From: Octopus bimaculoides
Lineage: Eukaryota
Direction: 5' to 3'
DNA: 64,000 nt
Assembly (NCBI RefSeq): GCF_001194135.2
Contig: NC_068995.1
Span: 50,181,572-50,245,571, forward strand
Shown: one piece after another, positions 27,564 through 31,391 of the stretch
How positions within the stretch are numbered: the first letter of the stretch is position 1
How the letters are laid out: each line of letters starts with the position of its first letter
Made by a program: the position numbers and the translations under genes
The notes under the pieces: generated by a model
What the model saw: only the letters and a program-made list of their open reading frames with translations
Databases searched by the model: none
Told to the model about the DNA's origin: nothing

Positions 27564-27661
27564 ATGACCCTTGGTATTGTAGCTGCACTGACTGCTGCCA
27601 GCACAATTGCAGCAATTAACTTCGTCTTTGTCATTGCTATTATTGTTTGGAGATGTAAACG
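27564..27661 (+). CDS. Membrane protein gene, coding exon 1 (TM segment)
   Basis: ctaatttcag|gttgtagg (27538) ... AAACG|gtaaat. Confidence 0.8.
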
Positions 27662-30575
27662 GTAAATATAATTTATATCACTTTGTCACTGTGTCAACTA
27701 GGTTATCAGATGTGGTTATACACCGCTAGTCACAATACACTTTCTCACATTATTATAGCTTTTGAATGATGTCACTCTGTGGCCAACATTATCTCTGAAA
27801 GGAAGGTCAGCGCATTTCAGGGTTACTTGCTTACAGCTTACTGGACTGGAGCTGTGTGAAATGAAGTGTTTGGCTTAAGAACACAATGCACTACTGGTCT
27901 GAGAATTGAAACCATGATCTTGTGATTGTGAATGCAACACCCTAGCCACCCTAGCAGTGTCATTCGTTTCCAGTCTTCTACAAAAACATGTCTGGTTGTA
28001 GGAAGATGTTGCCTTGCTTAGAAACAAGTGAGCGCTAGTGACAGGAAAGGCATCCAACTGTAGTAAATCTGCCTCAACGAATTCTGTCTAACCCATGCAA
28101 GTAAGGAAAAGTGAATATTAGAACAATGATGATGATGATGATATTGATGGTGATGACATAGGCTGTATATTATGCTGGAAGCATAATCATGAAAATATTA
28201 AAGTTTCAACTTATGTTGACTTTTATATGAAGCTGTGTGGAATGACAACATTCCTAATTGTGGTTAAGATTGCAGCATAACATGTTCAATACATTAACAC
28301 TTCTGCCTACCAAACCACTATAATAATGATGATAATGATACTGGTGGTGGTGATGGAATTTTCCTTTAAACTTTTAAGTATGGTTACTCCAGATGCAGCA
28401 CAGAATTTTGTCAGTGAACAGGTCGCGGTCTCAAAGCGACGAAAATATTTTGACAAATTAAATTTAAATGTTGAAGTGAATCTAACGGTTTTTGTGTGTT
28501 ATTTTAAATGGCTTATAAACACCTTCTACGCTGCAGATGTTAACTATCTTATAAAGAAAAAAAAAGAAAAAATAGAATCGGTATTTTCTGCAAGTCACAT
28601 TGCCTTAATAAACTTGACATATCTAAACAGAAAATAGCTTCAAACATGACTTTCCTCAACAAAAGAGAGACTGGTATATAAAATTGCTTTCTGTAGTTAA
28701 AGATTATCAAGTTCTAAGTGGATATATTTGATTTGTGCAGTAAAAGGGTTAATTTTTAGCCTAATCTTTTCTGGATTGTCACACATTTAATTTCAAACTG
28801 TTTTTTTTCCTTCATCAATTTATTCTTATATTTATTTTTTCCTTTCATCAACAACAGATGGAAAAAATCAAAGCCTGTTCCAGTAACATCACTGTCATCC
28901 CAACCAACTATTCTCAAAAGAAAACCTATAAATATCAGCAGATTAGATCTGAATCCACAAAACTTTGCTGGGCAGCAAAATCCTGTCTATACAGTGCCAA
29001 CTGTAATACAAACAGTTCCAAGCAGAAATCCAATTTCATATGAGAGGCAATCAAACAGGCCCCCTAACAAAGTTTGGCCACCTCTTGGTCAGTTTTTAAC
29101 GATGAATGATTCAGTTATGTGGTATCCAGTTGAGAATGCTACTGTTGTCCCTGGTAAGTAAGATAACGTAATTTTGATTGATTGGTTCAATCGTATTTCC
29201 TGTGATTACTCAGTCATTACATAGTTGAGATAAAATAGTTTCTTTGGTTCCTTAGTTTGGTTTAACCATTATGACTAAAGCTGTACTGAAATGTTGATGG
29301 AGCGGAGAATATTTGGGGTGTATTTTTGTTATTTGTAAGCTAGTTAGAAGGGGAGGGAGCAGGCAGTACTCATGGCTATTGCAGGACTTCCCGGCCTGGT
29401 GAGATTGATGCATTCAATGTTTGGCATCAACATTTTGTAGGTCAATGTTTGCAAGAAGAGCATGTGTGAAGAAGGAATTCCAAGTGATTGCCATCCTGGG
29501 GAAGGAAGAGAGAATTTGGCGAAGTGTTTGGTGAGGCTTCTTAAAAGTTAAAAGTTAGACACAATGGTGGAGAGAGGAACATAAATAGTTGAGTTGGGTG
29601 AGCTTGCATGGCAAGGGTGTGTGTGTGTGGTAAGGGTGAGCTTGTATGGCAATGGTATGCAGTTACCTAACTTACAAGTGTGATGATGGGACCACCATTG
29701 CCACATGTGTGAAGTAGATTGCAAAATACAGTAATATAAGACAGTCTCCATTGGTCAAAAGCTAATCATGTATCTGGACGTGTATACCCAAGTCTAGCAA
29801 GACTTTTATATGCTTTGAGTTCTACAGTTTTGAATTAATATATAAATGTGTGTGTGTGTGAGTGTATGTACATATGTGTGTGTGTGTATATATATATATT
29901 TCGAAACGTCTAGTTAGAATAGAGACAGCTAATGAAGGGATATTCCAAGTGGCTTTCCGTTTTCCATGTGTTCGTTCCGTTGTCTGTAGTTCATTGTTCT
30001 AACGTCCTGTGCCCTGATATGCATATATATACACATGTAGATGTATGTACATATGTGTGTATACATGTATATATACATGTATATATATTCTTTGTATATA
30101 TATATATGCACACACACATACACACATTCTAAAAGTGGTGTTAACAACCTGGTTAATTATAATTTGCTGTTTCTTTGTATTATGTTTATTTTTTATTTTA
30201 TTTTTTTTCCAGCCAGACAACAAGCTCAGTAAGTAATATCTTCATATATTTGTCTGTCATTTATTCTATAGCTTTTTTGTCTGCAACTGTTGTTAGAAGG
30301 TGTGTAGTATGTGATGAAATTTATTATCTATTTTTTTTTTCTCATTTTTGTTAATAAATTGGACAATGGAGTACAAATGTGTATTGATGGCCTTTCCTGT
30401 TCCTTAAAGACTAGTGAGATGGATATGGCCTGGGCATCTGTGGATAAATGTTTGCAAGATGGATGCAAGTAAGGAGGGATCTGGGGATCTACTAGTCAGG
30501 TTTTACTCACACAGTGTCAACATGAAGACATGTTGCAACACCCACACACACATACACACTCACGTCTGTGTGTGA

Positions 30576-30610
<35 letters not shown>

Positions 30611-31391
30611 NNNNNNNNNNTGGGCTAGATGGTTTAACCGGGCTGGCATGCTGGAAGGCTGCGCCAGGCTCCAGTCTAGTTTGGCATGGTTTTCTACAGC
30701 TGGATGCCCTTTCTAATGTCGACCACTCTGAGAGTGTAATAGACACTTTTACATTCCACCAGCATGGGTGCCAATTTGCGTGACACCAGTGCTAAAATTT
30801 GAAACCAATATTATATATCTTGTAAGTGGGGAGCTGGCAAAATGGCTAGTACGTTGGGTAAGTGGTATTTCGTCCAACTTTATGTTCTGAGTTTATATTC
30901 TGCCAAAGTAGACTTTGCCCTTCATCCTTTTCAGGATCAATAAATGAATACCAGCTGAATACTTAGGTTGATGTGAATGACTTATCCCCTCCCTTGGCAT
31001 TGCTGGCCTTGTGCCAAAATTTGAAATTAATGTTACATATTTTGACTTTCATTAAAACAATTACTAAACAGTTTTTTTCTTTTTTTCTTTTTAACTCTTT
31101 CAGGAACTCAGTGAGTACAATTTTATATTTTTCTCATAATTCATAACTTTATAAAATGTGTTACTATATAAAAATAGATTAAAACAAAAACAAACATTGA
31201 ATAATTCTTTTATTGGAGATAGCACTCACTAATATAACAACAAACCAACAAAGTAGATTGTTGATTTTAACATAATTTATTTCATATCTCTTTTTCAGAA
31301 AGAAAGACCTGAATATTTGAAGAGACAGAGAGACCCAGGCTTTGGATCAGTAGAAATTTTACCTGATTATGATGATGATGTATGTTATTGA
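27564..31391 (+). CDS. Uncharacterised single-pass (signal-anchor/type III) membrane protein; exons 27564-27661, 28858-29153, 30213-30228, 31104-31110, 31299-31391 (169 aa if the last exon is read through to TGA)
   Basis: An in-frame TAG lies upstream of the ATG. N-terminus is MTLGIVAALTAASTIAAINFVFVIAIIVWRCKR (hydrophobic segment, then a basic cluster). Five exons have strong AG/GT sites and compatible phases (2, 1, 2, 0), totalling 510 nt = 170 codons with no internal stop. No family recognised. Confidence 0.78.
28858..29153 (+). CDS. Membrane protein gene, exon 2 (296 nt, Pro/Ser/Thr-rich cytoplasmic region)
   Basis: tttcatcaacaacag|A TGG AAA...CCT G|gtaagt; 98 codons open in the phase set by exon 1 (WKKSKPVPVT..NPVYTVP..WYPVENATVVP). 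Confidence 0.8.
30213..30228 (+). CDS. 16-nt microexon (ARQQAQ)
   Basis: Long T tract ttttttttccag|CCAGACAACAAGCTCA|gtaagt; phase 1-2. Confidence 0.7.
31104..31110 (+). CDS. 7-nt microexon (QNS)
   Basis: tttttaactctttcag|GAACTCA|gtgagt; phase 2-0, which restores the frame for the next exon. Confidence 0.68.
31299..31391 (+). CDS. Membrane protein gene, exon 5 (KERPEYLKRQRDPGFGSVEILPDYDDD then VCY* or donor at 31379)
   Basis: atctctttttcag|AAAGAA...; internal donor GAT|gtatgt at 31379/31380, or stop TGA at 31389-31391. Confidence 0.72.
   Translation, partial: KERPEYLKRQRDPGFGSVEILPDYDDDVCY

What the first reader, a model, noticed from the sequence alone, without database searches (positions are those of the whole stretch)
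27564..31391. Unannotated-looking membrane protein with transmembrane-adaptor architecture
Seen: a gene invisible in the ORF track but spliceable in frame over five exons. It has almost no ectodomain, one hydrophobic anchor, a juxtamembrane Cys in WRCKR followed by a basic cluster, and a disordered Pro/Ser/Thr tail with several Tyr motifs (YTVP, SYER, WYPV, EYLK, DYDD). Established: vertebrate transmembrane adaptors (LAT, NTAL, PAG) share this layout of a short N-terminus, palmitoylated Cys and SH2-docking Tyr, with little sequence conservation. Inference: this may be a lineage-specific signalling scaffold. I recognise no homologue.
Basis: partly seen in the sequence, partly recalled or inferred. 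Interest (0 to 1): 0.75.

Follow-up and report, generated by a model that had tools for sequence, protein, structure and literature searches.

The report
Annotated cephalopod-only single-pass membrane protein
The five-exon gene is real, but it is already in public databases as an uncharacterised octopus protein; it is a small, fast-evolving, cephalopod-restricted membrane-anchored protein, and only one of its six tyrosines is conserved, so the LAT-like signalling scaffold idea is only weakly supported.

Summary
The N gap at 30611-30620 lies in intron 3 and does not touch the reading frame.

The gene is not unannotated. Its product is 100% identical to Octopus bimaculoides LOC106870792 (XP_014772478.1, UniProt A0A0L8HHQ4). 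RefSeq also lists two shorter isoforms that skip the 7-nt exon or both micro-exons.

Relatives exist only in O. sinensis, O. vulgaris, Argonauta hians (same gene neighbourhood) and two transcript contigs from an unidentified organism. An exhaustive search of 1.84 billion proteins found nothing else, and no Pfam or PDB family matches.

The layout holds: an N-terminus of 2-6 residues, one confident helix (residues 3-37) and a disordered tail. Conserved across the family are the helix, V-W-x-C at its end, one tyrosine in V-Y-x-[VL]-P, and, between octopus and the unidentified transcript, a C-terminal RQRxPxxGSxxxLP block. The other five tyrosines are not conserved, and there is no CxxC or conserved YxN.

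Selection is mildly purifying (dN/dS 0.42).

Best reading: a lineage-restricted, membrane-tethered, probably S-acylated docking protein with one YxxP site, not a multi-tyrosine scaffold. Function is untested.

The parts
27539..27563 (+). 5' UTR part of the first coding exon. A possible acceptor AG lies at 27537-27538. An in-frame TAG at 27549-27551 closes the frame upstream of the ATG.
   Evidence: Sequence. Upstream stop and its conservation in O. sinensis. The exon start is inferred, not shown.
27564..27661 (+). Coding exon 1 (98 nt): Met1 to the first two bases of codon 33. It holds the TM helix (residues 3-29, 27570-27650), W29 (27648-27650) and the juxtamembrane Cys31 (27654-27656).
   Evidence: 96/98 nt identical in O. 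sinensis.
28858..29153 (+). Coding exon 2 (296 nt): residues 33-132 (both end codons split across splice junctions), comprising the basic cluster and most of the disordered tail. It includes the conserved V76-Y77-T-V-P80 (28985-28999).
30213..30228 (+). Micro-exon 3 (16 nt, shifts the frame). It has a tandem acceptor CCAG|CCAG (alternative start at 30217).
   Evidence: Strong splice sites, conserved in O. sinensis. Present in RefSeq isoform X1 and in the 169-aa form.
30611..30620 (.). Assembly gap (N x10) inside intron 3. It is not part of the CDS.
31104..31110 (+). Micro-exon 4 (7 nt, GAACTCA). It is needed, together with exon 3, to read exon 5 in the long conserved frame.
   Evidence: Splice sites and the 7-nt length are conserved in O. 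sinensis (CAACTCG). It is rare as a chance site. It is skipped in RefSeq isoforms X1 and X2. No read-level evidence was available here.
31299..31391 (+). Last coding exon (93 nt with TGA at 31389-31391): residues 140-169, including the conserved block R148-P161 (31323-31364). The alternative stops of the short isoforms are at 31318-31320 (X1) and 31310-31312 (X2).

Best explanation
This is a real protein-coding gene that is already annotated: Octopus bimaculoides LOC106870792. By sequence detection it belongs to a small, fast-evolving family restricted to cephalopods.

It encodes a roughly 169-aa single-pass membrane protein. The 2-6 N-terminal residues would face outside or the lumen, followed by one TM helix and an intrinsically disordered tail in the cytoplasm (type III, N-out/C-in).

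The likely mechanism (inferred, not shown) is a membrane-tethered docking protein that works through a few short linear motifs:
- an invariant Cys two residues after the helix-capping Trp (V-W-x-C), a candidate S-acylation site;
- one invariant tyrosine in V-Y-x-[VL]-P, which fits the phospho-YxxP class read by Crk, Nck and Abl-type SH2 domains;
- a W-x-P-x-E-N block;
- a C-terminal RQRxPxxGSxxxLP block.

The C-terminal block is read only when two frame-shifting micro-exons (16 nt and 7 nt) are both included. Skipping them, as in RefSeq isoforms X1 and X2, gives proteins without that module. The gene is at most a one-tyrosine adaptor, not a LAT-like multi-tyrosine scaffold.
For: Gene model: the translation is 100% identical over 100% of its length to A0A0L8HHQ4 / XP_014772478.1. 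Isoforms X1 and X2 equal the e1-e2-e3-e5 and e1-e2-e5 splicings exactly.

Conservation: all exons, their GT/AG sites and the micro-exon lengths are kept in O. sinensis. dN/dS is 0.42 (12 synonymous, 18 non-synonymous changes; binomial P = 0.026 against neutrality) and 0.22 in exon 5.

Homologues: the Argonauta hians homologue lies between the same INTS14-like and CS/TPR genes. Two independent RNA-type contigs (SRR24189498, SRR27666080) carry an intron-free 167-aa homologue. Without the TM segment the tails are still similar (0 of 2000 shuffles reach the score). The exon-5 long frame matches that homologue's C-terminus (3 of 2000).

Architecture: the Kyte-Doolittle maximum is 2.3-3.3 over residues 1-33. 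There are 6 K/R and no D/E in the 15 residues after the helix in Octopus, and 5 K/R with 1 E in P0006. AlphaFold2 gives one helix at 3-37 (pLDDT 78-91) and the rest below 50.

Invariant positions: S13, I15, A16, V28, W29, C31, V76, Y77, P80, S118 and N126.

YxxP as the ancient Crk SH2 consensus: PMC5043372.
Against: No experiment or read-level data supports topology, acylation, phosphorylation or any partner.

The conservation rests on only three or four lineages, and the organism behind P0006 is unknown.

The juxtamembrane region of Argonauta is not basic (2 K/R against 3 D/E), so the positive-inside argument is weak there.

A single YxxP is a thin basis for an adaptor, and there is no conserved PxxP, YxN or ITIM.

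N-x-S/T sequons are mildly frequent in the tail, and one position (ENAT / ENDT / ENKS) is shared by Octopus and P0006. That could hint at a luminal tail, although the enrichment is not significant (P = 0.05-0.67).

Current RefSeq models for O. bimaculoides omit the 7-nt exon. The Argonauta model ends right after exon 2, and no C-terminal block could be found there.

Exons are only slightly better conserved than their intron flanks (94.1% against 91.7%).
Confidence: 0.45

Rival explanations
1. It is an accessory or regulatory subunit of a membrane complex, in the way KCNE, FXYD, RAMP or Nav-beta subunits work. On this reading the TM helix is the functional part: it packs against a channel, transporter or receptor, and the tail only modulates.
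For: The TM segment is the best-conserved part, about 41-47% identical between lineages against about 27-30% for the tail regions aligned in the same searches. It has an invariant S-x-I-A, several small-xxx-small spacings and a mid-membrane Asn in Octopus and Argonauta. The only matches to solved structures, all weak, are TM segments of syndecan-2, RAMP2, Nav beta-2 and an FXYD protein (E 0.04-1.8).
Against: Those matches are at noise level and driven by composition. They fall below the Pfam cut-offs (16.5 bits against 31.5; 13.1 against 25.2). Tail motifs are conserved as well. No partner is known.
Confidence: 0.2
2. It is a LAT/NTAL/PAG-like multi-tyrosine signalling scaffold. Several phosphotyrosines would recruit several SH2 proteins to a palmitoylated raft anchor.
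For: The overall layout matches the published definition of transmembrane adaptor proteins: a short ectodomain, one TM and a long tail with tyrosines (PMC2803307). O. bimaculoides has six tail tyrosines.
Against: Only one of the six tyrosines is conserved, and Y122 is already lost in O. sinensis. There is no CxxC and no conserved YxN, YxxM or ITIM. No sequence similarity to any vertebrate adaptor appears in exhaustive searches.
Confidence: 0.07
3. The tail faces outside, either in a type II orientation or after cleavage of the hydrophobic segment as a signal peptide. The product would then be a glycosylated, mucin-like or peptide-precursor protein.
For: There are three N-x-S/T sequons in the tail of Octopus and of Argonauta, and one of them is positionally shared with P0006. 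Several dibasic sites (KR, KRK, KRQR) occur in Octopus. The tail is rich in Pro, Ser and Thr.
Against: The hydrophobic run is 25-27 residues with no positively charged n-region, which is too long for a cleaved signal peptide. It is predicted as one continuous helix at 3-37. The strong basic cluster and the Cys sit on the C-terminal side, which by the positive-inside rule is the cytoplasmic side. Sequon enrichment is not significant. The dibasic sites are not conserved in P0006 or P0007, and no GKR amidation signal is present.
Confidence: 0.08
4. It is a spurious or non-functional gene model: a chance ORF that annotation pipelines have propagated.
For: The coding sequence is short and the region is rich in repeats. 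Exon identity to O. sinensis is only slightly above the intron flanks. The annotations of closely related octopuses may not be independent of each other.
Against: A syntenic orthologue exists in Argonauta. Spliced transcript contigs come from two independent sequencing runs of a distant relative. Tail similarity is significant. dN/dS is below 1. Splice sites and micro-exon lengths are conserved.
Confidence: 0.03

Closest known systems
Vertebrate transmembrane adaptor proteins (LAT, NTAL/LAB, PAG/Cbp, LIME; also LAX, SIT, TRIM)
   Same: A very short N-terminal ectodomain, a single TM helix, a Cys next to the cytoplasmic end of the helix, and a long disordered tail containing tyrosine (definition in PMC2803307).
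   Different: One Cys instead of CxxC. One conserved tyrosine instead of up to ten. No YxN (Grb2-type) site. No detectable homology. Restricted to cephalopods. Acylation, phosphorylation and expression in immune cells are all untested.
Phospho-YxxP docking sites for Crk/CrkL, and by my recollection also Nck, Abl and RasGAP SH2 domains, as in p130Cas/BCAR1 and paxillin Y31/Y118
   Same: The only invariant tyrosine sits in Y-x-x-P (YTVP, YAVP, YVLP). The pYxxP-Crk pairing predates animals (PMC5043372), so octopus should have the reader domain.
   Different: A single site against 6-25 in BCAR1 orthologues. There is no SH3 or FAT domain. Phosphorylation is not shown, and the tyrosine could be conserved for another reason.
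Small single-pass accessory subunits (FXYD, KCNE, RAMP, Nav beta) and the syndecan TM/juxtamembrane region
   Same: A TM helix followed by a basic stop-transfer cluster. The TM sequence is conserved, with small residues. These are the only weak hits to PDB and Pfam.
   Different: All matches fall below the curated thresholds and are limited to the TM segment. Those families have real ectodomains or signature motifs that are absent here.
Frame-switching micro-exons (exons of 27 nt or less; knowledge of the class is from memory)
   Same: The 16-nt and 7-nt exons have strong, conserved splice sites. Their inclusion decides which C-terminus is made.
   Different: Most described neural micro-exons are multiples of 3 nt and keep the frame, whereas these shift it. 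Tissue regulation is unknown, and the skipping isoforms might be artefacts of read alignment.

Membership tests
Transmembrane adaptor proteins (TRAPs: LAT/NTAL/PAG/LIME class) | Short extracellular N-terminus, single TM domain, long cytoplasmic tail | tested here: met
   2-6 residues precede the hydrophobic run. An in-frame stop upstream of the ATG in all five loci fixes the start. Kyte-Doolittle peak 2.3-3.3. AlphaFold2 predicts a helix at 3-37 and a disordered rest. Orientation is only predicted, from flanking charges.
Transmembrane adaptor proteins (TRAPs: LAT/NTAL/PAG/LIME class) | Juxtamembrane CxxC dicysteine palmitoylation motif (PMC2803307) | tested here: not met
   There is no CxxC in any of the four homologues. 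A single invariant Cys in V-W-x-C is present.
Transmembrane adaptor proteins (TRAPs: LAT/NTAL/PAG/LIME class) | Several tyrosine-based signalling motifs that are conserved (e.g. YxN for Grb2/Gads) | tested here: not met
   Only Y77 is invariant. Y122 is lost in O. sinensis. Y94, Y145, Y163 and Y169 are absent in P0006 and P0007. No YxN, YxxM or ITIM is conserved.
Transmembrane adaptor proteins (TRAPs: LAT/NTAL/PAG/LIME class) | Sequence relationship to a known member | tested here: not met
   phmmer against 1.84 billion representatives gave 4 hits, all cephalopod or unidentified. The profile search added nothing. No Pfam or PDB hit rose above noise.
Transmembrane adaptor proteins (TRAPs: LAT/NTAL/PAG/LIME class) | S-acylation of the Cys, and inducible Tyr phosphorylation with SH2 recruitment | not testable with these tools
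   Needs acyl-biotin exchange, phosphoproteomics and pull-downs.
pYxxP (Crk-type SH2) docking proteins | A Y-x-x-P motif conserved in the cytoplasmic region | tested here: met
   YTVP (O. bimaculoides and O. sinensis), YAVP (P0006) and YVLP (Argonauta) fall in one alignment column block, with V76, Y77 and P80 invariant. Consensus from PMC5043372.
pYxxP (Crk-type SH2) docking proteins | Phosphorylation of that Tyr and binding of a Crk, Nck or Abl SH2 domain | not testable with these tools
   No phosphoproteome or binding data is available here.
Syndecan (PF01034) / protocadherin Cadherin_C_2 (PF16492) | Score at or above the Pfam gathering threshold | tested here: not met
   13.1 bits against 25.2, and 16.5 against 31.5. 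The matches cover only the TM and juxtamembrane residues.
Secreted peptide/protein precursor | Cleavable signal peptide (short h-region, small residues at -1/-3) and conserved dibasic processing sites | tested here: not met
   The uncharged hydrophobic run is 25-27 residues and forms one continuous helix. The dibasic sites are not conserved between lineages. No dedicated signal-peptide predictor was available, so this test is heuristic.

The most novel reading that the evidence does not exclude
This could be a cephalopod-specific, S-acylated membrane adaptor whose C-terminal interaction module (RQRxPxxGSxxxLP plus the acidic LPDYDDD end) is switched on or off by joint inclusion of two frame-shifting micro-exons of 16 and 7 nt. 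That would be a splicing-controlled choice of tail in a lineage-restricted signalling protein. The 7-nt exon would be among the shortest functional coding exons known.
Probability: 0.15. Interest if true: 0.55.

Novelty: new member of a known kind. Interest (0 to 1): 0.3.

Why it matters
If the mechanism holds, this would be an invertebrate example of the architecture 'tiny ectodomain, acylated anchor, phosphotyrosine docking tail', which is known mostly from vertebrate immune cells. It would have arisen independently in cephalopods. It could also be a tidy case of micro-exon-controlled choice of C-terminus.

As things stand it is one of thousands of uncharacterised, taxonomically restricted octopus genes. 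Its model is already public, and nothing here makes a long-standing question testable.

The practical value is corrective. The long 169-aa form, which current O. bimaculoides RefSeq models have dropped, is the one supported by cross-species conservation.

Tried and rejected
1. A Pfam scan of the protein and of all four family members gave only sub-threshold hits confined to the TM segment: Cadherin_C_2, Syndecan, Vpu, ODV-E18. I rejected these as compositional.
2. A PDB sequence search with the profile gave nothing below E = 0.04, again only TM segments.
3. A profile search of the 5.8-billion-protein set found no new members.
4. A literature search for the locus, protein and SRA identifiers found no papers. 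The organism behind SRR24189498 and SRR27666080 stays unknown.
5. I looked in Argonauta for micro-exons and for an exon-5-like C-terminal block. No strict micro-exon site and no RQRxP or GSxxxLP motif lies between exon 2 and the next gene. The annotated end 'ERDC*' resembles the Octopus X2 end 'ERKT*' only loosely. This is inconclusive.
6. N-glycosylation sequon enrichment, as a test for a luminal tail, was not significant.
7. NPxY (NPVY) and LPxY (LPDY) motifs are present only in Octopus species, so I rejected them as family features.
8. I did not run a fold search on the AlphaFold model. Outside the single helix the model has low confidence (mean pLDDT 53), so matches would be meaningless.
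9. The alternative 12-nt form of exon 3, and every combination other than 16+7 nt, runs into early stops in exon 5 (plus manual frame check).
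Full report
**What the window is.** The 64-kb window is eukaryotic, rich in repeats and microsatellites, and contains ten N runs. It is base-for-base identical, N runs included, to Octopus bimaculoides assembly GCA_001194135.2, chromosome record CM046615.1, at about 50,181,572-50,245,571.

**Checking the observation.**
- The exons lie on the + strand at 27564-27661 (98 nt), 28858-29153 (296), 30213-30228 (16), 31104-31110 (7) and 31299-31391 (93, ending in TGA).
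- Every intron is GT...AG, with strong donors (gtaaat, gtaagt, gtaagt, gtgagt) and long polypyrimidine tracts.
- The product is 169 aa and carries every quoted motif.
- The ATG is preceded by an in-frame TAG five codons upstream. That stop is conserved in O. sinensis, and all homologous loci also have in-frame stops upstream. The N-terminus therefore cannot be longer.
- Exon 2 is missing from the ORF list because its frame has no early ATG, GTG or TTG.

**The assembly gap.** N 30611-30620 lies inside intron 3, between the 16-nt and 7-nt exons. Both flanks align with the O. sinensis locus in the same order and on the same strand: 30520-30610 to L001 17074-17165, and 30621-31226 to L001 17745-18351. 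O. sinensis has about 580 nt between those points, made of (AT)n, unique sequence and the start of a SINE-like repeat. The gap probably hides about that much sequence. No annotated exon lies there, and no micro-exon-like site occurs in that O. sinensis interval. The reading frame does not depend on the gap.

**The gene is already annotated.** The 169-aa translation is 100% identical over its full length to UniProt A0A0L8HHQ4_OCTBM, which is XP_014772478.1, 'uncharacterized protein LOC106870792'. The current RefSeq annotation lists two shorter isoforms:
- X1 (143 aa) equals the splicing e1-e2-e3-e5.
- X2 (135 aa) equals e1-e2-e5.

I verified both by exact string identity. Both run into early stops in exon 5 (...AQKKDLNI* and ...VVPERKT*).

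**Are the two micro-exons real?** Four lines of evidence support them.
- Rarity: in the 128 kb of both strands, only four distinct sites have a pyrimidine-rich tract, YAG, 3-30 nt and GTRAGT. Two of them are exactly these exons, on the right strand, inside the 2.1-kb interval between exons 2 and 5.
- Conservation: in the 30-kb O. sinensis locus the only such sites on that strand are the two orthologous ones. The 7-nt exon changed at two bases (GAACTCA to CAACTCG) but kept its length and both splice sites.
- Frame: only the 16+7 combination opens the 30-codon frame of exon 5.
- Homology: that frame is conserved. Exon 5 is 89/93 identical in O. sinensis, with 2 synonymous and 2 non-synonymous changes (dN/dS 0.22). 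The peptide it encodes matches the C-terminus of a distant homologue, RQRDPGFGSVEILP against RQRKPHKGSIRYLP. Only 3 of 2000 shuffles reach that score.

The 169-aa form is therefore the evolutionarily supported product. I had no read-level data. Whether X1 and X2 are true alternative isoforms or artefacts of aligning reads across a 7-nt exon cannot be decided here.

**Relatives.**
- An exhaustive phmmer search of 1.84 billion representatives found four proteins: the query itself; an O. vulgaris fragment that includes the micro-exon-encoded residues (CAI9733868.1); P0006, a 167-aa protein (E = 6e-9, aligned over residues 1-162); and an Argonauta hians protein, P0007 (GAB1605148.1, E = 4e-5).
- The 90% cluster also holds the O. 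sinensis orthologue LOC115220624, at 91% identity.
- P0006 and its one-residue variant P0008 sit on intron-free contigs of about 1 kb, with UTRs, from two different sequencing runs (SRR24189498 and SRR27666080). These look like transcripts. I could not identify the organism.
- A profile search added nothing.
- In Argonauta the gene lies between an INTS14-like gene and a CS/TPR gene, both on the opposite strand. The window has the same arrangement, so P0007 is a positional orthologue.
- No Pfam family and no PDB sequence matches above noise. The weak hits (Cadherin_C_2, Syndecan, RAMP2, Nav beta-2, FXYD) cover only the TM segment.

**What is conserved.** Across O. bimaculoides, O. sinensis, P0006 and P0007 the invariant positions are:
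- S13, I15 and A16 inside the helix;
- V28, W29 and C31 at its end;
- V76, Y77 and P80;
- a few isolated tail residues, including S118 and N126.

Without the TM segment, the Octopus tail is still significantly similar to both P0006 and Argonauta (0 of 2000 shuffles each).

Of the six tyrosines, only Y77 is conserved. Y122 (WYPV) is Arg in O. sinensis, and the other four have no counterpart in P0006 or P0007. A motif scan shows that YxxP is the only tyrosine motif shared by all. There is no CxxC, and no conserved YxN, YxxM, ITIM, PxxP, NPxY or PPxY.

Between the two Octopus species dN/dS is 0.42 (12 synonymous and 18 non-synonymous changes; dS 0.11; binomial P = 0.026). Exon identity (94.1%) is only a little above that of the intron flanks (91.7%). 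This is purifying but relaxed selection, which is usual for disordered tails.

**Architecture and topology.**
- Hydropathy peaks at 2.3-3.3 over the first ~30 residues.
- The uncharged run is 25-27 residues long.
- Only 2-6 residues precede it, with no net charge.
- In Octopus, 6 K/R and no acidic residue follow within 15 positions. P0006 has 5 K/R and 1 E. Argonauta is not basic there.
- AlphaFold2 on the four-sequence alignment gives one helix at 3-37 (pLDDT 78-91), with everything else below 50.

By the positive-inside rule (established knowledge), this predicts an N-out/C-in (type III) anchor with a disordered cytoplasmic tail. The run is too long, and lacks a charged n-region, for a cleaved signal peptide. 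Sequons in the tail are not significantly enriched.

**How it most likely works.** Shown: it is a conserved, expressed gene (expression in at least one relative) that encodes a single TM helix plus a disordered tail with a handful of conserved short motifs.

Inferred:
- The tail is cytoplasmic.
- Cys31, two residues after the interfacial Trp and next to basic residues, is S-acylated.
- Tyr77 in V-Y-x-[VL]-P is a phosphorylation-dependent docking site of the YxxP class. Phospho-YxxP is the Crk/CrkL SH2 consensus, and that specificity predates animals (PMC5043372).
- The C-terminal block is a second interaction module, present only when both micro-exons are included.

The main rival is that the conserved TM helix (S-x-I-A, small residues, a mid-membrane Asn in two lineages) binds a membrane partner, making the protein an accessory subunit.

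**Comparison with known systems.** Transmembrane adaptor proteins are defined by a short ectodomain, one TM domain and a long tail with several tyrosine motifs. LAT, LIME, NTAL and PAG also have a juxtamembrane CxxC (PMC2803307). This protein meets the layout criterion. It fails the CxxC, multi-tyrosine and homology criteria. It may work like a minimal adaptor, but it should not be filed as a LAT-family member.

**Verdict.** The gene model is already public, while the family is undescribed and its function unknown. Interest is modest (0.3). The most unusual element is the conserved pair of frame-shifting micro-exons that decide the C-terminus.

Noticed in passing
window 4725-5126 (-) and 8762-9124 (-): These are exons of an Integrator complex subunit 14-like gene (IntS14 beta-barrel, E = 6e-6; weak VWA_2). 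One exon is 95% identical at protein level in Argonauta hians (L003 900-1076), which shows conserved synteny with the gene under study.
   Followed up: partly
window 59662-59760, 60358-60471, 61683-61760, 62384-62458, 63561-63707 (-): These are exons of a CS+TPR protein, 73-100% identical at protein level to the gene downstream of the Argonauta homologue. The domain order looks DNAAF4/DYX1C1-like, but that identification is from memory and was not tested.
   Followed up: partly
window about 35818 to beyond 41320 (-): The public annotation calls a 516-aa cytochrome P450 gene (PF00067) here, between the studied gene and the TPR gene. Argonauta has no gene in that position.
   Followed up: no
window 30213 and 30217 (+): Micro-exon 3 has a tandem acceptor CCAG|CCAG, conserved in O. 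sinensis. Using the downstream AG would give a 12-nt exon and a different frame.
   Followed up: partly
window 42525-42542 (+) and 15208-15217 (-): These are the only other sites in the window with the micro-exon-like signature (polypyrimidine-YAG, 3-30 nt, GTRAGT). They may be micro-exons of other genes or chance matches.
   Followed up: no
window 30621-30773, 24166-24418, 34787-35008, 5538-5948, 10581-10883, 19000-19108 and others: A SINE-like repeat is present in many copies; its ORF translations read ...RLQSDLAEFLQLDAxPNANHSKSV.... One copy abuts the assembly gap in intron 3. Several gaps are flanked by (AT)n or (AC)n microsatellites.
   Followed up: partly
L001 16351-17073 (O. sinensis intron 3): About 720 nt is present in O. 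sinensis but absent from the O. bimaculoides window at the corresponding point. The O. sinensis gene spans 10 kb against 3.8 kb here, mostly through intron insertions.
   Followed up: no
L003 16008-16021 (Argonauta hians): The Argonauta model joins exon 2 directly to a last exon that encodes ERDC-stop. This resembles the Octopus short isoform X2 (ERKT-stop). No long C-terminal frame or micro-exon could be found there.
   Followed up: partly
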